This document shows, piece after piece, positions 1,128 through 50,847 of a stretch of DNA of 64,000 nucleotides (within the stretch, counting starts at the first letter, position 1; each line of letters opens with the position of its first letter). The stretch is from Scyliorhinus canicula (taxonomy: Eukaryota). The notes under the pieces were generated by a model. That model saw nothing but the letters and a program-made list of their open reading frames with translations. It was not told where the DNA came from and searched no databases. The position numbers were made by a program, and so were the translations under genes. The stretch is from the NCBI RefSeq assembly GCF_902713615.1, contig NC_052156.1, positions 165,970,789 to 166,034,788 of the forward strand, read 5' to 3'.

Positions 1128-1786
1128 GGATGGCATGTTAGCATAGTGGTTAGCACTGTTGCATCATAGCGCCAGGGACCTGAGTTCGATTCCCGGTTTG
1201 GGTCACTGTCTGTCTGGAGTCTGCACATTCTCCTCGTGTCTGCGTGTGTTTCCTCCGGGTGCTCCGGTTTCATTGAACATAGAACAGTACAGCACAGAAC
1301 AGGCCCTTCGGCCCTCGATGTTGTGCCGAGCAATGATCACCCTACTCAAACCCACGTATCCACCCTATACCCGTAACCCAACAACACCCCCCTTAACCTT
1401 ACTTTTTAGGACACTACGGGCAATTTAGCCTGGCCAATCCACCTAACCCGCACATCTTTGGACTGTGGGAGGAAACCGGAGCACCCGGAGGAAACCCACG
1501 CACACACGGGGAGGACGTGCAGACTCTGCACAGACAGTGACCCAGCCGGGAATCGAACCTGGGACCCTGGAGCTGTGAAGCATTTATGCTAACCACCATG
1601 CTACCGTGCTGCCCGTTTCCTCCCACAAATCCCGAAAGACGTGCTGTTAGATAATTTGGACATTCTGAATTCTCCCTCCGTGTACCCGATCAGGTGCCGG
1701 AATGCAGCGACTCGGGGCTTTTCACAGTAACTTAATTGCAGTGTCAATGTAATCCTATTTGTGACATGAATAAAGATTATTATTAT
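1128..1786 (+). mobile_element. V-SINE interrupted by an antisense HE1-like V-SINE (1272-1613)
   Basis: Host resumes at GTTTCCTCCCACAAATCC after the insert; GTTTC duplicated. Confidence 0.88.
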
Positions 1787-2162
1787 TTGGATTGGGTGAC
1801 ACAATGGACTCGTTACTGGCTCTTACATTCTGATGAGGCATTAACTGGAGCTGCTTCCTGTGAACTGTGTTTGAGAAGCTCCAATACTGCTCTGATTGGG
1901 GAGTTTCCTCCGGCTACATTTCACCTGGTGCTGATGAAGGATTCGCAAACTCATTCAGACAATCTGGGATAGTCGGTGTGGGAGATGGTGCAAAGGGAGC
2001 AGCTACCTGAGCTACCAAGATGGGAGAGAGGGAGCGTGAGAGTGCACAGAGATTGAGAATAAACCCATGGTTGTTTCAAGGGTGAAAGTGTCCTAACCTC
2101 CAGCAGGAACGAAGTGCATTTAGCCTGTAACTAAGCACGGGTTAAATGGATGATATACTCAC

Positions 2163-2474
2163 CGTAGTTTGTGTCGGCCTTATGGCTTGCAGCTGGAGTT
2201 GCTTGGGTTCGGTTTCTCCATTGCTTGAGACCGGTTCCAGACTCTCGAGTTTGTCGCCATTAGTACCATTGCTGATATCATTGGAGGTGATATTAGGAAT
2301 ATCAAACTCTGTTGGCTTCACACCAGGTTGCACACGGATGGTTTCTGGTTGAATACAAACACATTCCCATTGTTCCCCACTGGCTCTGCACTTGCAGCCA
2401 GGCTGATCGGGAGGAACGTTCTCCCCGCCGTTTCCAAAACAGTGGAATAAGCTGGAGCAGGGGAAAGGATGCAT
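2163..2474 (-). CDS. FAM107B: FAM107B long isoform, first coding exon (104 codons, phase-0 donor)
   Basis: ATG at 2474 gives MHPFPCSSLFHCFGN...TIRVQP..., matching the remembered human long-isoform N-terminus (MHPFPCSALLACFGN...TVRVQP). Ends at donor ACG|GTGAGT (2162). Syntenic with CDNF/HSPA14. Confidence 0.8.
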
Positions 2475-3039
2475 TCTCCCGCAGTTAATAAGACAGAGCT
2501 CCTCAGCAATGTGAGGACATCTTTCGGACAAGGAAACTTGTTTGGCTCATTAGATCCACCCACTGCAGAGTAAATAGAAGGCTTTACAGAAACTTATAGG
2601 ATGTTCCGCACAAAGGTGTTCCCCTGTCCAGCCTGAGGGTATCAGCTGTAGGAGAAGCAACAGGAGATTACCGATCTGAACGAACATGATAGTCTCAAGT
2701 GTATCTGATCTGTCAAGTCATTAAACCCAACAATATCAGATCAGTGATATTATTCCTGAAAAACAATTCTCGGATTACAGACTTTAAATATTTAATTTCT
2801 AAAATAAAGAAAACATTTATCTATCATTCACACGGATCTAAAAGTTACTTTCAAGTTTGGGCAGGTCATTTATATTTAATGGTGACAATGACCAGCTGAG
2901 GAATGCATTGTGTTGATAGAGAAACACACGATATAACAGCATAGTTTGGCCTTGTTCATTTTCTTCCCTCTCTGTCCAACTATACAACTTAGAAATCCAT
3001 TTATTTAGCACCTTTTGGAGCTCAGACAGTGAAGCGCTT

Positions 3040-3115
3040 CTGAAGTTTTGACATTGTTGTAATGTAGGAAATGCTGCAGCCAATTTCTGCACAGCAAGCT
3101 CCCAAAAACAGTAAT
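3040..3115 (-). mobile_element. Deu-SINE (SacSINE1/AmnSINE-like) fragment
   Basis: TGTAATGTAGGAAATGCTGCAGCCAATTT...CACAGCAAGCTCCCA, Deu-domain-like. Confidence 0.6.
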
Positions 3116-3144
3116 ACCATAATGGTCCTGTGTTTTATTGCTGA

Positions 3145-3650
3145 ATAAAGTGGCCTGCTGTCAAAGCTTGTCGACTACCACTCATCAGGTCAGCTCGCAA
3201 GGCATTTCCAACAGTGACAGGGCACAACAATATATAACAGTTGAGAGGAGGGTGCTGATTGGTTGCTAAGTGCACTCTGATTTGTGGAGGCATTGAAATG
3301 GAGAAGGCAGCATGGAACAGTTAACTGCCCAGCTTTGTTCAAATTCAAACCTGGCAGGTCGACTCTAACTGGTTAAGGCATTGCTCTGAGGAATGAACCA
3401 GGGAATGGCTGACCCCTAAACAATTGTTTCGTTGGAAAGGACGCAATGTGCAGACATGTTCTTTCTGTGTGCAAAGGGTAGGGCCCCCTTGTAGGAATGC
3501 ATGTGGCTTCCAGCGTATGGAAACGGGCCACACTGCGAGCCCAACTGAGTGTAACTGTTAGTGTAATTTTTAGTACAGCAAATGCTGCCCAATTGTGCAG
3601 TCACATCTAATGTTGGTCAATGTGTTTTGAATTTTGCAAGTACGGCTGTT
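3145..3650 (-). mobile_element. Penelope-like element 3' fragment (decayed GIY-YIG C-terminus plus hammerhead remnant)
   Basis: Frameshifted IGQHLL...ARSVA..LEA..PxLCTQKEHV; CTGATGA...AAGCTT remnant near 3160-3190. Confidence 0.65.
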
Positions 3651-26575: not shown

Positions 26576-26761
26576 ATATTGAGTTGGATGATCTATGTAC
26601 CCGAACAGGCGACGGAGTGTGGCGACAAGGGGATTTTCACATTAACTTCCTTGCAGTGTTAATTTAAACCTACTTGCGACACTAAGAAAGATAATTATTA
26701 TTGTAGAACAGACATGGGCTCTTCCTGCACTGCAACCAGTCTTGTTTAATAAGTTGCCCAG

Positions 26762-26780
26762 GAGCCCCCTCTAGTGGCCA
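26762..26780 (-). promoter_or_regulatory. CTCF motif downstream of the CDNF stop codon
   Basis: Minus strand TGGCCACTAGAGGGGGCTC; one mismatch to CCASYAGRKGGCRS. Confidence 0.55.
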
Positions 26781-26948
26781 GTCAATCTTCTAAATGTTCA
26801 AAAACACTGAAAGAACACAAAGAACTGAGAAGACCATTTGAAGTGGTAAATTTATCTTTATGGTATACCATATCCATGGCATGCACCATACATATACTGC
26901 ATAACATCGCTGAGGTCCAGTTTTCCTTTTAAAAATGTAGGTAATTCT

Positions 26949-27133
26949 TTATGGTTCACAATTGACATCTAGTTCATCAATGTGATCTTTCCGCGCTAAT
27001 TCCAAGATTAAATTGATTAACTCCACTTTCTCCACACACGCTATGCATTTCTCTCCCCAGTCATCGAGAATCCTCTTCAGCTCTGCCACTCGCAGTCTGC
27101 TCAGTTCAACTTTATTCAATTTCAATTTCTTAG
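26949..27133 (-). CDS. CDNF: CDNF exon 4 (SAP-like domain, ...RVAELKRILDDWGEKCIACVEK...HIDELDVNCEP*)
   Basis: cctatAG acceptor, in frame with exon 3, CxxC (CIAC), TAA at 26949-26951; total CDS 537 nt = 178 aa. Confidence 0.94.
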
Positions 27134-27406
27134 CTATAGGAACACAGAGAAAATCTATTTTAATAGTTACGCCACAATGTTGTTAATGAAATGTCAGGCA
27201 GTCTAATACACTATTACTTTTGCTAAATATTTACTTTTGCTAAATATTCAAGTGTCTAATGACACCCCACCAATGGGTGACACATGCAAAACATTCCAGA
27301 AATTCCATCATTGACAAATTATCTTCTGTTCAACTACAAAACTTATTATTTTCACAGGGAAATTTTGACCAAGGTTTACAAGTTTTTTGTATCTCAAAAA
27401 TTACTA

Positions 27407-29284: not shown

Positions 29285-31230
29285 TCCCCACCTTCCGACC
29301 CGAACACCATAACCCTTAATCCCTTTATTCTTCAAAAAACAATCTATCTTTACCTTAAAAACATTTAATGAAGGAGCCTCAACTGCTTCACTGGGCAAGG
29401 AATTACAGATTCACAACCCTTTGGGTGAAGAAGTTCCTCTAAACCCAGTCCTAAATCTACTTCCCCTTATTTTGAGGCTATGCCCCCTAGTTCTGCTTTC
29501 ACCCGCCAGTGGAAACAACCTGCCCGCATCTATCCTATCTACTCCCTTCAGAATTTTATACATTTCTATAAGATCCCCCCGCATTCTTCTAAATTCCAAC
29601 GAGTACAGTCCCAGTCTACTCAACCTCTCCTCGTAATCCACCCCCTTCAGCTCTGGGATTAACCTAGTGAATCTCCTCTGGACACCCTCCAGTGCCAGTA
29701 CGTCCTTTCTCAGGTAAGGAGACCAAAACTGAACACAATACTCCAGGTGTGGCCTCACTAACACCTTTACAATTGCAGCATAACCTCCCTACTCTTAAAC
29801 TCCATCACTCTAGCAACGAAGGACAAAACTCCATTAGCCTTCTTAAGCACCTCTAAACCAATTTTTTGTGACTCATGCACGAGCACACCCAGCACTGCAC
29901 AGCAGCATGTTTTAATATTTAATCATTTAAATAATAATCCCTTTTGCTATTATTCGTACAAAAATGGATAACCTCACATTTGTCAACATTGTATTCCATC
30001 TGCCAGACCCTAGCCCATTCACTTAACCTATCCAAATCCCTCTGCAGACTTCCAGTATCCTCTGCACTTTTTGGTTTACCAATCTTAGAGTCATCTGCAA
30101 ACTTGGACACATTGCACTTGGTCCCCAACTCCAAATCATCTATGTAAATTGTGAACAATTGTGGGCCCAACACTGATCCCTGAGGGACACCACTAGCTAC
30201 TGATTGCCAACCAGAGAAACACCCATTAATCCCCACTATTTGCTTTCTATTAATTAACCAATCCTCTATCCGTGCTACTACTTTACCCTTAATGCCATGC
30301 ATCTTTATCTTATGCAGCAACCTTTTGTGTGGCACCTTGTCAAAGGCTTTCTGGAAATCCAGATATACCACATCCATTGGCTCCCCATTATCTACTGCAC
30401 TGGTAATGCCCTCAAAAAATTCCACTAAATTAGTTAGGCACGACCTGCCCTTTATGAACCCATGCTGCGACTGCCCAATGGGACAATTTCCATCCAGATG
30501 CCTCGTTATTTCTTCCTTGATGATAGATTCCAGCATCTTCCCTACTATTGAAGTTAAGCTAACTGGCCTATAATTACCCGCTTTCTGTCTACCTCCTTTT
30601 TTAAACAGTGGTGTCACGTTTGCTAATTTCCAATCTGCCGGGACCACCCCAGAGTCTAGTGAATTTTGGTAAATTATCACTAGTGCATTTGCAATTTCCC
30701 TAGCCATCTCTCTTATCACTCTGGGATGCATTCCATCAGGGCCAGGAGACTTGTCTACCTTTAGCCCCATTAGCTTGCCCATCACTACTTCCTTAGTGAT
30801 AACAATCATCTCAAGGTCTTCAGCTGTCATAGCCTCATTTCCATCAGTCACTGTCATGTTATGTGTCTTCACTGTGAAGACCGACCCAAAAAACCTGTTC
30901 AGTTCCTCAGCCATTTCCTCATCTCCCATTGTTAAATCTCCCTTCTCATCCTCTAAAGGACCAATATTTACCTTAGCCACTCTTTTTTGTTTTATATATT
31001 TGTAGAAAATTTTACTGTTTTTATATTCTGAGCAAGTTTACTCTCATAATCTATCTTACTCTTCTTTATAGCTTTTTTAGTAGCTTTCTGTTGCCCCCTA
31101 AAGATTTCCCAGTCCTCTAGTCTCCCACTAATCTTTGCCACTTTGTATGCTTTTTCCTTCAATTTGATACTCTCCCTTATTTCCTTAGATAGATTTACCC
31201 TCTTTCTACCGTCCTTCCTTTATGTCGGTA
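29285..31230 (-). mobile_element. CR1 LINE ORF2 fragment (RT ORF 29919-30980) in CDNF intron 3
   Basis: KSPGPDG, NYRPVSLTS, QHGF, YLDFQKAFDKVPH, GVPQGSVLGP, FADD. Confidence 0.95.
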
Positions 31231-32073: not shown

Positions 32074-32215
32074 CATATTTCAGCTCACAGATCTGCATGT
32101 CTTTCCGTTTCAGTTTTTCACAAATCTTCAGGACCGGTACATGTGCACTCATAGGACGGGCTATTTCATTCACAATTTTAGTTGCGGCATCACTTGTTGC
32201 TCCAACATAGTAGCA
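32074..32215 (-). CDS. CDNF: CDNF exon 3 ([27 protein letters not shown]...ICELKY)
   Basis: catAG acceptor, GTACGT donor, 142 nt; CYYxGATxDAATKI signature; MSAHVP is CDNF-like rather than MANF-like. Confidence 0.96.
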
Positions 32216-34805: not shown

Positions 34806-34933
34806 CAGGCGGTGCTCCTTTCCTTTGGTATGTTCACACATTAGCATCAGTTCATTTACTACCATTTCAAGTGTCAGCTCCACATCCTGCGCTTTCAAAT
34901 ATTTGTAAAATCTCTCCAGAAATCCAATGCATA
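34806..34933 (-). CDS. CDNF: CDNF exon 2 (VCIGFLERFYKYLK...CEHTKGKEHRL)
   Basis: catttAG acceptor, GTAAGT donor, 128 nt; ARMET saposin-like domain motifs. Confidence 0.95.
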
Positions 34934-37681: not shown

Positions 37682-39023
37682 TGTAAGACTCGTTCTTGTT
37701 TATTTCGGTTGTTCCCATATATTTAATTTAATTATTTTTGGTCCATGGACCCACATACGGAATGTGCCTTTTGAGCAGAGGACCCAAGCTGAAGCAGCCT
37801 GCTTGTCAGGACAGTGTGCACCAGGTTTTGTATTTTGAGGAGGAGAAACAGACTCGCTAGCTCCTGGTGAATCTTAAGAACCAGCTTTGGAGGAAGGCAG
37901 TTTGATTGGTTGGGAAGGCAGGCAGTGGGTTGGCCAGGGACAATGTTCTGTCTGACAACAGTCAGCAATTGGTTCCTGCATGATGCTTCTGAGAGCTGAT
38001 CAGAAGTGATTAGATCTTGGAAGGAGAAGAAACAGTTTCTCTCTCTCACTGAAATAACTGTTTTATTGTTCTAAAACCAGTGAACGCCTGGCACATCTTT
38101 CCTGTAAACTTGAAATGATCCTGAATTTACCGAAAAAGTAGGCAATCTTGCCAGAGAACCCGCCTGAAGTCTTTAGACCCTCTAAGGAAGAGGAGCCGTG
38201 TTTCTCCCTCTCTCGGCTGCTGATTGTCTGCTGTCTGTGTGAGTCTGCAGTGAAGATCATCACAGGCCAGGGTCCCAGGTTCGATTCCCCGCTGGGTCAT
38301 TGCCTGTGTGGAGTCTGCATGTTCTCTCCGTGTCTGTGTGGGTTTCCTCCGGGTGCTCCGGTTTCCTCCCACAGTCCAAAGACATGCAGGTTAGGTGGAT
38401 TAGCCGTGCTAAATTGCCCTTAGTGTCCAAAAAGGTTAGGAGGGGTTATTGGGTTACGGTGGAAGTGAGGGCTCAAGTGGGTCGGTGCAGAGTTGATGGG
38501 CCGAACGGCCTCCTTCTGCACTGTACGTTCTCTATTCTAAGCTGAAGGGAGCGAAAGAACCCAACTGAAGGCCTAACCTTCAAACAGAAACTAACTGGAA
38601 GATATTCACCAGAGTCAAATATCCTTATTCTTTTCTATTATCGTTACCTCTCAACTACCCCTTTCCCTCNNNNNNNNNNNNNNNNNNNNNNNNNNNNNNN
38701 NNNNNNNNNNNNNNNNNNNNNNNNNNNNNNNNNNNNNNNNNNNNNNNNNNNNNNNNNNNNNNNNNNNNNNNNNNNNNNNNNNNNNNNNNNNNNNNNNNNN
38801 NNNNNNNNNNNNNNNNNNNNNNGCCAGCTGTATTTTTTTGCCTGTTTAATTATACTTACTGTTAATAATAAAACGTTATTTATGTTTACAAACCCCGTAA
38901 CTGTGGTCAATTTAACTCAACCAAAGCCACGGGTATCGCTATAAAATCTTATTTCACCTGCGTTGCCATGCAGGGTCAAGTAGGGCTGGAATTGACCGCG
39001 CACTAAGCCCGGGTGTTGTAACA
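37682..39023 (+). mobile_element. Solo LTR (TGTAAG...GTAACA) containing a V-SINE (38266-38538) and the assembly gap
   Basis: Same family as 10494-11803, opposite orientation. Confidence 0.75.
38670..38822. other. Assembly gap (153 N)
   Basis: Run of n. Confidence 1.
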
Positions 39024-40930
39024 TTACCTCCAGAAGAGACTGGAGATAAAAGAATATCAGACCAGGAGGCTAAATGTGATTTAAAAATCTTTCCTTACAT
39101 GGAAGCTAAACAGCGACAGAGGCTGGCTGGGCCAAATGGCCTGTTACTGTATTGCAAATTCTTTATATTTGTAGGAGTCATTTATCAACACAGGTATTGG
39201 CTAAATCAAATAACTGTTCCTTCAATGTAATGTTTCAGCTAATGTGGCAGCGATTATGGTCATTCCACACACATTGTATTCAGCCTTTCCAGAATACAGT
39301 GAATGTTATAGAAAGATGGCATTTTAGGAATAAGTCAATAAAGGTGAAGACTGAACTGGAGAACTGCCATTTTGTGGTAATACCTGATAAATGGCATTTT
39401 TCAGATATTTCCTACTGGGAATGGCACACAAAACTGGCCATCCTTCAGACTAAATCAGGTAACATTACTAAATGGTCATAGAGGAAATGGGGACAGTGGG
39501 GGGCACAGGGATTCAGAAGGGAGCACTCATTTGAGCTTGATAGTGAAAGTACATTGTGAGCACAGAGTAACAGGAACTTCACTACACATTCACCCATTGC
39601 TCTATCCAGAAAGTGGATGTTGAAATAGAAGCGCTTCAAATCACCAGCATGCATGTGCCTTATTTTGGCAAGCACAAATAATATGTTACAACAGTTTATG
39701 TAAATTGAGGTACAGACTTTAAATCCGTCTGTAAACTTTAACACAAAAGTAATTATGCCGTACTTTCTGACCATAGTCATTCAAAATTTGACCTCCAATT
39801 CTTTTCTTACTATTAAGTTATGAACCCAAACTATTTTGGTGGCATTGGCAATGTGCGTGGCAGAAAGCCACTAAGAACACTCAGTGGTTGAACAGGCATA
39901 ACAAGACCAACAAAAACCACGATCAGATAGAGAAGCAGGGGCTGTAGCATGATGCTGCAAAAGAACATGCTTTGATAGCGAGGAAAACTGTGGTACTAAG
40001 AGGCACACTGCTACCTAATTAGGACTGCATTCAGTTCCAAACAGAACGTGGAATCACACACTATAGAGCAAGGATCTACTTTCCGGTTTAAAAAAAAGTC
40101 AAGACTTCAGAAGTGCACACTCACCATGTACAAAAAATGTTACAATGCACCACTTGCTGCATGCCAGTCTTCCATCATGAATTTCATTGCCTGTGTGCTA
40201 AACATGCTTACATAAAGTCAAACAAGTTTAGAACAGTTATTTGCACGGTACCGCAAGAAGTTAGCACACACATAGGGTTAGCACTAGCTTTATCTGATCG
40301 GTACAATTTAATGCTGTGCAGTGCACGTTCATTTGTCATTTCAAATTATTCCAACCACTGGGGAGGCCTATAACAACTGGTGTGGGGTTTTTTTTGATAT
40401 CGAGCATTTTTTAAACACGACCCAACTTTGGAAGGACAACACTCTATAATTGTGTGACTAAACATTTTCAGTTGATAAACAGACTGTACAGAAACTTTCT
40501 ATCACTGCTATTAAACCTTACCAAAAAGGTATAATGACAATATGACATTTTATAATTAGTAAAATCATGAATACTATTTCTAAAGTTCTATTTTCTGGAT
40601 GCCAACTGATTTCCACTGTTCAGATACCAGGCTGACTGCAAAAGTCGATGAGTAGCATCAACATTGTTGAATGATCAGTTCGCAGCATAGACCATTCCAG
40701 GAGAAACATAACTGCAGCGTTAGCAATTTTTGTTTCCCCATCAGTGTAAAAAAAAAAGAATTAAAGTTACAATTTTCCACATCAAAACTTTTGAGGATCA
40801 TAGAATGGTTACAGATAGGAGGAGGCCATTTGGCCCATCGAGCCCATCCGGTTTCTTGGCCTTTAGCTGCTCCCACTCCCAACCCTTTTCCTGAACCCCT
40901 GCAATTTTGTCCCCCCCCCCCTTACAGGTG

Positions 40931-45756: not shown

Positions 45757-47127
45757 ATTAATCAAGGTTAGTTAGCATGGATTTGTTAAGGAAAGGTTGT
45801 GTCTGACTAACGTGAGTGAATTCTTTGAACTGGTAAAAGGGAGGATTGATGAAGGTAATGCAGTTGATGTAGTCTACCTGGATTTTAGCAAGACTTTTGA
45901 CAAGGTCCCACAAGGCAGACTGGCTCAAAAAAATAGAATCCTTTGGGATCCAGGGGAATGTAGCAAGTTGGATACAAAACTGGTTCAGTGGCAGGAAACA
46001 AAATGATCATTATTGATGGAGGTTTTTGTGGCTGGTAGGCTGTTTTCAGTGGGGTTCCGTAGGGCTCAGTACTCAATCCCCAGCTTTTACATGTGTTGAG
46101 TGTTTCAGCCTCAACCACTGACTTAGGCAGTGAATTCCAGACGCTCACCACCCTTTGAGTGAAAAGGTTTTTCCTCATGTCCACTCTAATCCTTCTACCA
46201 ATCACCTTAAATCTCTGCCCCCTGGTAATTGAGTCCTCAGCTAGGGGAAGCAAGTCTTTCCTATCTCGGTCTCTGATAATTTTGTACACCTCAATTAGGT
46301 CACCACTCGGGTAGCACAGTGGTGCTGTGGCTAGCACTGCTGCCTCACGGCACCGAGGTCCCAGGTTCGATTCCGGCTCTGGGTCAGTGTGGAGTTTGCA
46401 CATTCTCCCCGTGTGTGCGTGGGTTTCACCCCCTCAACCCAAAGATGTGCAGGGTAGGTGGATTGGCCACGCTAAATTGCCCCTTAATTGGAAAACATGA
46501 ATTGGGTACTCTAAATTTTTTTAAAAATAGATCACCACTCAGCCTCCGAAAACAACCCCAGCCTAACCAATCTCTTCTCTTGGCCCCACTTTTCTAAGCC
46601 CTGGCAAAGTTATTGTAATCTCTGTACTCTCTCCTGAGAAGTGATGTCCTTCTTGTGATGTGGTGACTAGAACTGTACACAGAACTCCAGATGTGGCCTA
46701 AGCAACGTTTCTATCCAGTTCCAGCGTTACACCCCTGCTTTTGTATTCAATACCTCACCCAATAAAAGGCATTACATGTGCATTATCGCCTTATCCAGCT
46801 GTCCTACCACCCTCAAAAACCTGTGGAGATGCACATCAAGCTCTCACTTACAGTAACTTCATTGCAGTGTTAATGTAAACCTACTTGTGACAATAAAATG
46901 ATTATTATTCCTCAACCCCTTTTAATATTTTCCCATTTATTAAGTATTCCCTTTTCTGCCCTCGCCAAATACATTACCTCACATTTTTCTGGACGGAATT
47001 CCATTTCTCTGCCCACACCAAACTATTGATCTCATTCTGTAGTCCAGAAGTGTTCTCTTCACTATCACCTGGTCAGACTTTGGTGTCATCTGCAAATTTC
47101 CCAATCATGCCACCCACACTGAAGTCT
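45757..47127. mobile_element. CR1 RT fragment with internal inversion (+ 45757-46090; - 46095-47127) and nested V-SINE (46309-46527)
   Basis: Plus part ends at P.GSVL; minus part starts at the following ...GKFADDTK motif. Confidence 0.75.
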
Positions 47128-48092: not shown

Positions 48093-48174
48093 CTTCACAT
48101 TCCCCGGGCTGGAGGGGCTGCCCGCCCTGGGCCAGCCACAGCAGCAGCAGCGGCACCGGGAGCAGCCGCTTCAT
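48093..48174 (-). CDS. CDNF: CDNF exon 1 (signal peptide MKRLLPVPLLLLWLAQGG-QPLQPGECE)
   Basis: gacATG start, hydrophobic leader, ...CE motif, donor G|GTGAGC; 82 nt, phase 1. Confidence 0.92.
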
Positions 48175-48766
48175 GTCGGGCCTGCAAACTGCCTCACAAC
48201 CGAAAGTAAACAGCGGCCGCCATTGCGGACTCCATTGGGCAGGCGCTGCTCCAATCAGCGCGCCGCTCTCCCGTCCCGCAATCCCATTGGGCAGTGTCTC
48301 TCCAATCAGCGCACGGCTCTCCCATCCCGCAATCGCATTGGGCAGAACCTCGCCAATCAGCGCACGGCTCTCCCATCCCGCAATCGCATTGGGCAGGCGC
48401 TGCTCCAATCAGCGCGCCGCTGTCCCGTCCCGCAATCCCATTGGGCAGAGCATCTCCAGTCAGCGCGCCGCTCTCCCATCCCGCAATTCCATTGGGTAGA
48501 ACCTCGCCAATCAGCGCGCGGCTCTCCCATCCCACAATCCCATTGGGCAGGCACTACTCCAATCAGCGTGCTCTAGTCCTACCCACAATCCCATTGGGCA
48601 GAGATTCTCCAATCAGCGTGTTATTTTCCCATACCACATTCCCATTGGGCAGACGCTGCTCCAATCAGCGCGCTGCTCGCCCATCCCGCAATCCCATTGG
48701 GCAGACACTGCCAGACACTCCCATTGGTCAGTTGCAGTATCTCTGGGCGGTTGTATAGTAACAACA
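48175..48766. promoter_or_regulatory. Bidirectional CDNF/HSPA14 promoter within a CpG-rich island
   Basis: Divergent ATGs separated by 592 bp; CpG-rich; many CCAAT boxes; YY1-like ATGGCGG at both ends. Confidence 0.85.
48230..48710. repeat. ~51-bp tandem repeat (about 9.3 units), each unit with ATTGG and CCAAT
   Basis: ATTGG at 48234, 48286, 48337, 48388, 48440, 48491, 48542, 48593, 48644, 48696; CCAAT at 48251, 48302, 48353, 48405, 48507, 48559, 48609, 48661 (CCAGT at 48456). Confidence 0.95.
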
Positions 48767-48823
48767 ATGGCGGCGATTGGAGTCCATCTCGGCGGCACGT
48801 GCAGCTGTGTGGCCGTCTACAAG
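48767..48823 (+). CDS. HSPA14: HSPA14 exon 1 (MAAIGVHLGGTCSCVAVYK)
   Basis: acaATGG Kozak context, HSPA14 N-terminus, AAG|GTGGGA. Confidence 0.95.
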
Positions 48824-48885
48824 GTGGGAGCCGGGCCCGTTCCATCCGGGGGGGAGTCCAGCCCGGTTCAGTCCGGCCCTGCTTC

Positions 48886-49335
48886 CTGGGGGCTGTATGT
48901 GGGCACTGGGTGGGTGTGGGCACTGGGGTGTGGGTACGGGGTGGGTGTGGGCAGTGGGGGTTGGGCACTGGGCTGTGGGGCCACTGGGGGGTGGGGGTTG
49001 GGCACTGGGGGGTGGGGCTGTATGTGGGCACTGGGGGGTGTGGGCAGTGGGGGGTTGGGCACTGGGGTGTGGGCAGTGGGGGTTGGGCACTGGGCTGTGG
49101 GGGCACTGGGTGGGGGTTGGGCACTGGGATGTGGGGCTGTATGTGGGCACTGGGGGGTGTGGGTACTGGGTGGGTGTGGGGGTTGGGCACTGGGATGTGG
49201 GGCTGTATGTGGGCACTGGGGGGTGTTTGTACTGGGTGGGTGTGGGCAGTGGGGGTTGGGCACTGGGATGTGGGGCTGTATGTGGGCACTGTGGGGGTGC
49301 TGGTGGGTGGGGTGTATCTGGGCACTGGGGGGTAT
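48886..49335. repeat. G-rich minisatellite (GGGCACTGGG / GGGGCTGTATGT variants) in HSPA14 intron 1
   Basis: Directly visible tandem array. Confidence 0.93.
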
Positions 49336-50032
49336 GTTGACGAGAGATACTAGTGAGTTTTGTTGAGAAAAATGAAGTGTAAGGGAAGCTGACCTGAAGG
49401 CTGCGAAGGTCCAGTCTGCCGTGCTTAACTAGAGACCTCAGTTCTGTATGTTAGAAAGGAAAAGGGGGCATTCTGGAGAATCGGGTAGGACCAAGTAAAC
49501 CGGTAAAGAGAGAAGTTCAGCAAGAAATAAATAGCAAGGGTTTTGGTGTGTGAGTTAGTGACACACGTACTGGGACCAGGAGGTCGATTTGGTAGGGATA
49601 CTTGAGCTGTGACCTGTGCGGCCTTGCCCAGAGGAATAGGATAATAAAAGCAAAATACTGCTGATGCTGGAAATTTGAAATAGAAACAGAAAATGCCAGA
49701 AATATTCCAGTCTGGCAGCATCTGTATAAGAAAACCAAAAGTTTTTTATTTTTCCAATCAAGCGGCAATTTAGCATAGCCAATCCACCTACCCTGCACAT
49801 CTCTCCCCCTCTCTGTTCTATCTTTTACAACTATCTGACCAAGGCAAGAGTGCTACTGACTGAGCCACGGTTCTCATACAAAGGCTGAAAGTTGGTTTGA
49901 TGATCCACTGCACCATCCCATTACTTTCATATTCTTTGAATGCAGTTTTGTTCATGGTTTCTGGCAAGCAGTAACAAAACATTTCTAATGTATTTCTCCT
50001 GTGATATAAAACTTGGATTTGCTTCCTCCTAG

Positions 50033-50113
50033 GATGGTCGAGCAGATGTTGTGGCAAATGATGCAGGTGACCGTGTTACCCCAGCAGTTGTTGCTTACAG
50101 AGAAAATGAGAAG
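50033..50113 (+). CDS. HSPA14: HSPA14 exon 2 ([22 protein letters not shown]...)
   Basis: AG/GT bounded, 81 nt, Hsp70 NBD motif. Confidence 0.96.
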
Positions 50114-50191
50114 GTAATTGAAACCATTTTATATCTTTGACATTGTACACATGGTTGAATTTTGAGTGTCATTATTTGCTTTATTTATTAG

Positions 50192-50274
50192 ATTGTTGGC
50201 TTGGCAGCAAAACATGGTAGAATCAGAAATGCTTCAAACACTATCCTGAAAGTGAAGCAGATTCTTGGCAGACG
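50192..50274 (+). CDS. HSPA14: HSPA14 exon 3 (IVGLAAKHGRIRNASNTILKVKQILGR)
   Basis: AG/GT bounded, 83 nt, frame continuous. Confidence 0.95.
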
Positions 50275-50847
50275 GTAAGAACTGAAATCTTTGTAACTAG
50301 AACTATGTAAATATATCTTTGCTGCCTCGGTGGCAATTGCAGTTCAGATTGTACTGGGAGAAGATGAATTATTTGATGATTTTATACACACTTTATAGTA
50401 AAATGCAACGGCTGCACATTAGCTGGAACTCTCCGGCCGTTGGGATCCTCGTTTCCCGCTGGTAGCGCACCCCCACCTGCGAGCTTCCCGGCAGCCCTAC
50501 CTAACCTGAACATCTTTTGACTGGGAGGAAACCGGAGCACCCGGATCAACCCATGCAGACACAGGGAGAACTCCACATTAACAGTCACCCAAGGCCAGAA
50601 TTGAACCTAGGTTCCTGGTGTTGTGAAGCAGCAGTGCTAACCACTGCCGCCATGCTGCCACACAAATGGACTGAAATCTTAATTAAAAATAAATTATTTG
50701 TCTCTCTAGTAGATGTTTTATATAAATGTTATAATCAGGGGGCACATAATGGCATTTTTTGAAAGTATTTTGCAATTTTATGCATTGACAATCCTTCAAT
50801 TAAATTGTGTCCTTCCATTTCCAAAATTGTTCCTAACTTTTTCCTAG

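What the first reader, a model, noticed from the sequence alone, without database searches (positions are those of the whole stretch)
26949..26984. Shark CDNF with its ER-retention motif masked by a Cys-bearing C-terminal extension
Seen: the spliced ORF ends ...ARKDHIDEL-DVNCEP*, so the DEL motif (26970-26978) sits 6 residues before the stop, and the tail adds a ninth Cys to the eight conserved ones. The codons read GAA CTA GAT, with an out-of-frame TAG right after the Glu codon, as expected if a 2-nt loss removed an ancestral CTN TAG stop. Known: mammalian CDNF (KTEL) and MANF (RTDL) end in KDEL-receptor ligands, and these must be C-terminal to work. Inference: this protein may escape KDELR retrieval and be constitutively secreted, may form disulfide-linked dimers, or may use thiol-mediated (ERp44-type) retention instead.
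Basis: partly seen in the sequence, partly recalled or inferred. Interest (0 to 1): 0.75.

Follow-up and report, generated by a model that had tools for sequence, protein, structure and literature searches.

The report
Catshark CDNF lost its ER-retrieval ending
The small-spotted catshark's CDNF gene really does end in ...DELDVNCEP, but the six-residue tail is ancient, and what changed is that the usual last residues (..NFDL, a KDEL-like ER-retrieval signal) mutated to ..NFDP in the genus and ..NCEP in this species, so the protein probably escapes KDEL-receptor retrieval.

Summary
Window 26949-27133 (minus strand) is the last exon of Scyliorhinus canicula CDNF, RefSeq XP_038667885.1, 178 aa. 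It ends ...ARKDHIDELDVNCEP*. One DNA and three RNA-like contig sets from four studies show this stretch with no indel and no base difference. The RNA-like contigs are spliced to exon 3, and two of them are polyadenylated.

It proposed an ancestral ...HIDEL stop, lost by a 2-nt deletion and then masked by an extension. Twenty elasmobranch CDNFs align without gaps at the C-terminus. Seventeen of them end D[VL]N[FS][DE]L or a close variant. The internal DEL is a variable, non-terminal position.

The real change is at the last residue. The terminal Leu became Pro in Scyliorhinus: S. torazame has ..NFDP, the same in two assemblies. S. canicula then changed F to C and D to E, giving ..NCEP. Heterodontus independently lacks the last two residues.

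The ninth Cys is therefore specific to S. canicula and recent. Loss of KDEL-receptor retrieval is inferred from published motif rules and KTEL-deletion data, not shown here. This is a modest, testable, lineage-specific variant of a known protein.

The parts
48093..48174 (-). CDNF exon 1 coding part: ATG at 48174, a signal-peptide-like N-terminus MKRLLPVPLLLLWLAQGG..., ending ..GECE with G as the first base of the Val codon. Donor is GTGAGC.
   Evidence: Peptide mapping of P0249 and the splice flanks.
34806..34933 (-). CDNF exon 2 (VCIGFLERFY...KGKEHRL). Acceptor AG, donor GTAAGT.
32074..32215 (-). CDNF exon 3 ([13 protein letters not shown]...QICELKY plus G). Acceptor AG, donor GTACGT.
   Evidence: The RNA contigs' loose end at 27134 is the reverse complement of the end of this exon.
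26949..27133 (-). CDNF exon 4 coding part: the SAP-like ARMET_C domain with CIAC (the CXXC motif), the tail ...ARKDHIDELDVNCEP, and the TAA stop at 26951-26949.
   Evidence: Pfam ARMET_C at 63.5 bits against a cut-off of 23.5. Sequence. Contig support.
26952..26963 (-). Terminal tetrapeptide N-C-E-P. It is homologous to N-F-D-L or N-S-D-L of other elasmobranchs and to N-F-D-P of S. torazame.
   Evidence: Alignment A1 and the C-terminus list.
26958..26960 (-). TGT, the ninth cysteine (Cys176). It is specific to S. canicula; relatives have Phe or Ser here.
   Evidence: The tail 167-178 has pLDDT below 50 in a low-confidence AF2 model.
26970..26978 (-). Internal D-E-L, at positions -9 to -7. This is a variable position in a non-terminal stretch, not an ancestral C-terminus.
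   Evidence: Alignment A1.
26837..26948 (-). Short 3'UTR up to the proximal poly(A) site at about 26837-26840. A longer 3'UTR form also exists: the X8 contig runs on to 26600 or beyond.
   Evidence: Poly(T) loose ends at 26837 in X14 and X15, and X8 record 25.

Best explanation
This is the genuine, intact and expressed CDNF orthologue of the small-spotted catshark. Its C-terminal tail is homologous, residue for residue, to the ancestral elasmobranch tail ...D[VL]-N-[FS]-[DE]-L. The last four residues of that tail (NFDL, NSDL or NSEL) form a KDEL-like ending, as RSDL, RFDL and STDL do in bony fishes and KTEL does in human. In the Scyliorhinus lineage the terminal Leu codon changed to Pro, giving ..NFDP, which S. 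torazame still has. After that, S. canicula also changed Phe to Cys and Asp to Glu, giving ..NCEP. All three changes can be made by single-base substitutions in frame (TTT to TGT, GAT to GAA, CTA to CCA), with the stop codon in the same place. Up to here the account is shown. What follows is inferred. The KDEL receptor captures a free C-terminus ending in L, or F, with E or D at -2. The catshark protein therefore no longer offers a receptor ligand. It should be retrieved less and secreted more than the ancestral form, with any residual ER residence depending on binding to BiP/GRP78 and other chaperones. The extra changes at -3 and -2 fit relaxed constraint on a tail that had already lost its function. 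The new Cys sits in a flexible tail and is probably a by-product, although it could form mixed disulfides.
For: The sequence and its expression are supported. Identity with S. canicula RefSeq CDNF X3 and the two 5' isoforms comes. Alignment A1 of 20 elasmobranch and 5 bony-vertebrate CDNFs is gapless at the C-terminus: 17 of 20 elasmobranchs end [FS][DE]L, S. torazame ends FDP, S. canicula ends CEP, and Heterodontus stops 2 residues early. The S. torazame protein is encoded identically in two assemblies. In the tree the two Scyliorhinus are sisters (100/99) next to Mustelus (NFDL), and Heterodontus sits elsewhere, so there are two independent losses. Orthology is supported by head-to-head synteny with HSPA14 in the window and in S. 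torazame, Mustelus and Heterodontus. Substitutions cluster in the tail: 2 of the 6 S. canicula versus S. torazame differences over 153 mature residues fall in the last 3 (hypergeometric P = 0.004, a post hoc test), and 3 of 21 do so against Mustelus (P = 0.002). Such losses are rare: 124 of 132 fetched vertebrate CDNF/MANF sequences end DL or EL. From the literature: position -1 accepts L or F, less well M or I; -2 accepts E, less well D; -4 accepts N; -3 accepts anything except Pro (PMC2140024). The receptor captures the free carboxyl terminus (PMC8248988). Deleting KTEL from human CDNF raises the secreted share from 8% to 48% (PMC6628564).
Against: No functional data exist for any shark CDNF. 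NFDL and NSDL have not been tested as KDELR ligands. The closest tested motif, NEDL, gave mixed ER-Golgi localisation on a reporter. In mouse, secretion of CDNF lacking QTEL was still lowered by GRP78 or KDELR1 overexpression, and the authors doubted direct recognition of the motif (PMC4731063). The loss may therefore change little. No DNA of other sharks could be fetched, so the single-base paths are inferred from the protein alignment and the catshark codons only. The clustering P-values are post hoc.
Confidence: 0.8

Rival explanations
1. The ancestor ended ...HIDEL-stop. A 2-nt deletion removed the stop and added a six-residue Cys-bearing extension that masks the motif.
For: Only the local pattern supports it: DEL lies six residues from the end, and an out-of-frame TAG follows the Glu codon.
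Against: The six-residue tail is present, with the same length, in sharks, rays and skates, and its end is the conserved part (..N[FS][DE]L). The DEL position is variable. No elasmobranch CDNF ends at that position.
Confidence: 0.02
2. An artefact. An assembly or sequencing indel or base error created the odd ending, and the real protein ends in a KDEL-like motif.
For: One low-depth RNA contig (X15 record 12, depth 15.5) has a 1-nt gap somewhere in 26960-27017.
Against: Contigs from four studies (one DNA, three RNA-like) agree with the window over 26949-26984 without gaps, at depths up to about 1300-3400. Two of them carry SNPs elsewhere and so are independent alleles. The congener S. torazame shares the terminal Pro in two assemblies.
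Confidence: 0.01
3. Neutral drift with no consequence. The elasmobranch ..N[FS]DL ending is already a poor KDELR ligand, or none. CDNF is kept in the ER mainly by binding BiP/GRP78. Losing the Leu then changed nothing, and the Cys is a harmless polymorphism-turned-fixation.
For: Mouse CDNF lacking its motif is still held back by GRP78 and KDELR1 overexpression (PMC4731063). Many proteins stay in the ER without their KDEL-like motif, and NEDL is only partly effective on a reporter (PMC2140024). Heterodontus has also lost the ending.
Against: The [DE]L ending is kept in 17 of 20 elasmobranch CDNFs and in 124 of 132 vertebrate CDNF/MANF sequences across very long times. That argues for selection on it. 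Human KTEL deletion clearly raises secretion.
Confidence: 0.2
4. Compensation through the new cysteine. Cys176 in the flexible tail replaces KDELR retrieval by thiol-mediated (ERp44-type) retention, or makes disulfide-linked dimers.
For: The ninth Cys lies three residues from the end in a low-confidence, probably disordered tail. A penultimate tailpiece Cys mediates free-thiol retention of IgM heavy chains (PMC11161108). The role of ERp44 rests on general knowledge and was not tested here.
Against: S. torazame lost the Leu but has no Cys, so the Cys is not needed to live without the motif. The F to C change sits beside a D to E change in the same three residues, which looks like relaxed constraint. 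No experiment exists.
Confidence: 0.1

Closest known systems
Human and mouse CDNF (C-terminus KTEL / QTEL)
   Same: Same family and orthologue. It has ARMET_N and ARMET_C domains, eight conserved Cys including the CXXC (CIAC here), four coding exons, and the HSPA14 neighbour.
   Different: The mammalian proteins end in a KDEL-like tetrapeptide whose deletion raises secretion. The catshark protein ends NCEP, with Pro at -1 and an extra Cys at -3.
Scyliorhinus torazame CDNF (XP_072327057.1 / GCB62061.1), ending ..DVNFDP
   Same: It is 96% identical and shares the terminal Leu to Pro change.
   Different: It keeps Phe and Asp at -3 and -2 and has only eight Cys. It therefore shows the intermediate state.
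Other elasmobranch CDNFs (for example Mustelus asterias ..DVNFDL, Carcharodon ..DVNSDL, Mobula ..DLNSDL, Leucoraja ..DLNSEL)
   Same: Same tail length, and in many of them the same internal DEL-like position.
   Different: They retain the terminal [DE]L.
Heterodontus francisci CDNF (XP_067915682.1), ending ..DVNF
   Same: A second, independent natural loss of the terminal motif in a shark.
   Different: The loss is by truncation of the last two residues, not by substitution. It could not be verified at DNA level here.
MANF of the same genome (ends ..KSRSEL)
   Same: The paralogue, with the same domains.
   Different: It keeps a canonical KDEL-like ending. The intact copy found is an intronless retrocopy on another chromosome.

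Membership tests
MANF/CDNF (ARMET) family | C-terminal SAP-like ARMET_C domain containing the CXXC motif | tested here: met
   Pfam PF10208 scores 63.5 bits (cut-off 23.5) on the exon 4 peptide. C147 and C150 (CIAC) are invariant in A1.
MANF/CDNF (ARMET) family | N-terminal saposin-like ARMET_N domain with six conserved Cys | tested here: met
   PF20145 is precomputed for the S. canicula protein P0139. C60, C71, C102 and C113 are invariant and C26 and C29 nearly invariant in A1.
MANF/CDNF (ARMET) family | N-terminal signal peptide (a secretory-pathway protein) | not tested
   Exon 1 encodes MKRLLPVPLLLLWLAQGG..., which is hydrophobic and signal-like by eye. No signal-peptide predictor was available. 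RefSeq isoforms X1 and X2 have other 5' exons without such a segment.
CDNF orthologue (as opposed to MANF) | Groups with CDNFs, and a separate MANF exists in the same genome | tested here: met
   The best hits are all named CDNF. The tree recovers the taxonomy of elasmobranch CDNFs. MANF copies lie elsewhere, on C4 and at C11:87.0 Mb.
CDNF orthologue (as opposed to MANF) | Conserved head-to-head neighbour HSPA14 | tested here: met
   HSPA14-like exons lie on the + strand at about 48.8, 50.03 and 50.19 kb. An HSP70-family gene of 509-545 aa sits on the opposite strand just upstream of CDNF in S. torazame, Mustelus and Heterodontus.
CDNF orthologue (as opposed to MANF) | C-terminal KDEL-like tetrapeptide ending in [DE]L | tested here: not met
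   It ends NCEP, whereas 124 of 132 relatives end DL or EL. This is the point of interest. It does not affect family membership, which rests on the domains.
KDEL-receptor ligands (soluble ER residents) | A free C-terminus with L or F (weakly M or I) at -1 and E or D at -2 | tested here: not met
   Pro is at -1. The rules come from PMC2140024 and PMC8248988. The internal DEL is not at a free C-terminus.
Clients of thiol-mediated (ERp44-type) retention | An exposed unpaired Cys that forms mixed disulfides with ERp44 or the ER matrix | not testable with these tools
   There is an odd Cys in a low-pLDDT tail. No binding or redox data exist.

The most novel reading that the evidence does not exclude
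Catsharks of the genus Scyliorhinus carry a natural CDNF without a retrieval motif. It would be constitutively secreted, acting as a true extracellular factor rather than a mainly ER-resident one. In S. canicula, retention or dimerisation would have been partly re-invented through a tail cysteine. This would be a natural experiment, in an embryologically tractable shark, on whether CDNF needs ER residence.
Probability: 0.25. Interest if true: 0.5.

Novelty: new variant of a known kind. Interest (0 to 1): 0.3.

Why it matters
Whether CDNF and MANF act mainly inside the ER or as secreted factors is debated, and so is the role of their KDEL-like endings. Published results on motif deletion conflict. 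This finding adds a lineage in which evolution removed the motif: two Scyliorhinus species, plus an independent truncation in the horn shark. The rest of the protein stays under evident constraint and is expressed. That offers ready-made natural variants (..NFDL..NFDP..NCEP..NF) for testing what the ending does. It is a modest point for specialists. The gene itself is ordinary and already annotated.

Tried and rejected
1. The assembly-error explanation was rejected by laying contigs of four runs on the stretch.
2. The 2-nt-deletion, masked-HIDEL explanation was rejected by the alignment.
3. The search for homologous proteins with the 61-aa exon 4 peptide found nothing. This reflects the word and length limits of the tool, not absence. 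The representative search and the search with the Mobula protein supplied the relatives instead.
No codon-level alignment, dN/dS test or check of the Heterodontus stop was therefore possible.
5. The AlphaFold2 model of the 178-aa protein with the 25-row alignment was poor (mean pLDDT 59.9). I used it only for the low confidence of the tail and ran no fold search.
6. No paper in the library links CDNF with Scyliorhinus in this sense; the one hit is unrelated.
7. No complex prediction was run, because no binding claim is made.
8. Alternative splicing inside exon 4 that would give another C-terminus was rejected: no joints appear in any contig set, and the RNA contigs run straight through the stop to the poly(A) site.

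Full report
**What is there**

The finding lies on the minus strand. The sequence at 26984-26949 reads CAC ATT GAT GAA CTA GAT GTC AAT TGT GAA CCA TAA, which is H-I-D-E-L-D-V-N-C-E-P-stop. The open frame 26949-27134 matches Pfam ARMET_C at 63.5 bits, against a cut-off of 23.5.

Stop-to-stop frames and peptide mapping give a four-exon gene with GT-AG introns. The coding parts are 48174-48093, 34933-34806, 32215-32074 and 27133-26949, which is 537 nt or 178 codons plus the stop. The product is identical to RefSeq XP_038667885.1, 'cerebral dopamine neurotrophic factor isoform X3 [Scyliorhinus canicula]'. Isoforms X1 and X2 differ only in their 5' exons.

The window is C11:165970789-166034788 of a 4.2-Gb genome. 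C11 is 169,802,008 bases long, the same length as the contig on record for the S. canicula protein.

**Is the sequence real and expressed?**

Contigs of four public runs from four studies were laid on 26600-27400.

- The DNA run X3 has a contig covering 26935-27350 with no difference.
- The RNA-like sets X8, X14 and X15 cover 26837-27134 with no gaps and no differing letter inside 26949-26984.
- All three RNA-like sets stop matching at 27134 and continue with the same 30 letters. Those letters are the reverse complement of the codons for [10 protein letters not shown], the end of exon 3, so the contigs are spliced.
- X14 and X15 carry a run of T before 26837, which is a poly(A) tail on the minus strand. 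X8 has a longer 3'UTR.
- X15 is heterozygous for a synonymous C/T at 27024, and X8 has A>G at 26919 in the 3'UTR. These are therefore not copies of the reference individual.
- One X15 contig with a 1-nt gap has about 1% of the depth of its gapless twin, which is error level.

The ending is genuine.

**What the relatives show**

A profile-free search of 1.8 billion representatives with the exon 4 peptide found a ray CDNF as best hit, 76% identical and ending ...SDELDLNSDL. A search with that protein, followed by cluster look-ups, gave CDNFs of 20 elasmobranch species.

These 20 align at the C-terminus without a single gap (A1):

| Group or species | C-terminal ending |
|---|---|
| Orectolobiform sharks and Mustelus | ..DVNFDL |
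| Heptranchias | ..DLNFDL |
| Pristiophorus | ..VFNFDL |
| Lamniform sharks | ..DVNSDL |
| Rays | ..DLNSDL |
| Skates | ..DLNSEL |
| Lungfish, coelacanth, gar, bowfin | RFDL, RSDL, RSDL, STDL |
| The mammalian representative (P0008) | KPEL |
| S. torazame | ..DVNFDP |
| S. canicula | ..DVNCEP |
| Heterodontus francisci | ..DVNF (two residues short) |

The S. torazame sequence is encoded identically in two assemblies.

In a maximum-likelihood tree the two Scyliorhinus are sisters (100/99) beside Mustelus, and Heterodontus branches elsewhere. Orthology is backed by the head-to-head HSPA14 neighbour in the window. It is also backed by an HSP70-family gene of 509-545 aa on the opposite strand just upstream of CDNF in S. 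torazame, Mustelus and Heterodontus.

**Consequence for the interpretation**

The six-residue 'extension' is ancestral. No elasmobranch CDNF ends at the DEL position, so there was no 2-nt deletion, and the out-of-frame TAG is a coincidence.

The homologous KDEL-like signal is the true C-terminus, N[FS][DE]L. It was lost in steps:

1. Leu became Pro on the branch leading to Scyliorhinus.
2. Phe became Cys and Asp became Glu in S. canicula.

With the catshark codons TGT GAA CCA, each step is one base away from TTT, GAT and CTA. The DNA of the other species could not be fetched, so this part is inference.

The differences cluster in the tail. Of the six differences between the two Scyliorhinus proteins over 153 mature residues, two fall in the last three (hypergeometric P = 0.004). 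Against Mustelus, three of 21 do (P = 0.002). These tests are post hoc, but they fit relaxed constraint on a tail whose function had gone.

Among 132 vertebrate CDNF/MANF sequences fetched, 124 end in DL or EL. The exceptions are the Scyliorhinus entries, Heterodontus, and three isoforms or doubtful predictions.

**How it most likely works (inferred)**

- Published reporter screens show that position -1 of a KDEL-like signal accepts L or F, weakly M or I. Position -2 prefers E, then D. Position -4 accepts N as well as K, R and H. Position -3 accepts anything except Pro (PMC2140024).
- The receptor first captures the free carboxyl terminus (PMC8248988).
- NFDL, NSDL and NSEL therefore look like usable, if untested, signals. 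NFDP and NCEP do not, and an internal DEL cannot serve.
- Deleting KTEL from human CDNF raised the secreted share from 8% to 48% and shifted some protein to the Golgi (PMC6628564).
- My best reading is that Scyliorhinus CDNF is retrieved less and secreted more than the ancestral form.
- The strength of this effect is uncertain. In mouse, CDNF without QTEL was still held back by GRP78 or KDELR1 overexpression (PMC4731063), so chaperone binding may keep much of it in the ER.
- The paralogue MANF of the same genome keeps ..KSRSEL.

**The ninth cysteine**

The ninth Cys is absent from S. torazame, so it is recent and is not required for life without the motif. It lies in a tail that a poor AlphaFold2 model (mean pLDDT 59.9) leaves at pLDDT below 50. 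Thiol-mediated retention through a tail Cys is known for IgM heavy chains (PMC11161108). Whether anything similar happens here can only be tested at the bench. I give it about 10%.

**Comparison, novelty and verdict**

By domains, cysteines, exon structure, phylogeny and synteny this is a member of the CDNF orthologue group. The one family trait it fails is the KDEL-like ending.

The gene and protein are already annotated. I found no paper noting the loss of the motif in catsharks. It is a new variant of a known kind. It is of modest interest as a natural series of endings (NFDL, NFDP, NCEP, truncated NF) for testing what the CDNF C-terminus does.

Its mechanism is wrong. Its functional suggestion survives in altered form.

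Noticed in passing
L001:1045-1665 and L009:1412-3122 (G000:C4, about 232.727-232.729 Mb), compared with L010, L012 and L013 (G000:C11:87.003-87.022 Mb): There is an intronless, intact MANF copy on C4, annotated as XP_038652179.1 'MANF-like'. It is a processed retrocopy: it holds the whole mRNA including about 1.1 kb of 3'UTR, has a poly(A) tail, and is flanked by a 13-bp target-site duplication, CAACCCTCCACAC. The intron-bearing parent on C11 is 98-100% identical. Relative to the retrocopy it carries a 1-nt gap in exon 3 and 15 gapped positions in 1248 nt of exon 4 plus 3'UTR, which break the frame. This is either an unpolished assembly region or a decaying parent gene. Exon 2 of the parent was not located.
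   Followed up: partly
window 48500-50275, + strand: HSPA14 lies head-to-head with CDNF. Its exon 1 (MAAIGVHLGG...) starts roughly 0.6 kb from the CDNF ATG, and further exons lie at about 50033 and 50192. The same arrangement is annotated in S. torazame, Mustelus and Heterodontus.
   Followed up: partly
window 38066-38296, 40102-40197 and 46915-47022, minus strand: The alternative first exons of RefSeq CDNF isoforms X2 (MIFTADSHRQQ...) and X1 (MEFRPEKCE..., HTGNEIHDGRLACSKW...) lack a signal peptide. At least one looks like part of a retroelement ORF. These isoforms would not enter the ER and may be annotation artefacts.
   Followed up: no
window 29922-31037, minus strand (CDNF intron 3): A 372-aa open frame resembling a LINE reverse transcriptase, with further fragments at 29414-29788.
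   Followed up: no
window 26600-26705: This stretch draws thousands of short contigs at 90-95% identity in all four runs. It is a high-copy repeat just downstream of the proximal CDNF poly(A) site and lies inside the longer 3'UTR form seen in run X8.
   Followed up: no
window 27024 and 26919: There are two natural variants. C/T at 27024 is a synonymous GTG/GTA Val, at about 40% of depth in run X15. A>G at 26919 lies in the 3'UTR, in run X8.
   Followed up: yes
P0134 (Heterodontus francisci CDNF, XP_067915682.1): It ends ..DVNF, two residues short of the conserved ..DL. This is a second, independent loss of the ending in a shark. It could not be checked at DNA level.
   Followed up: partly
   Followed up: no
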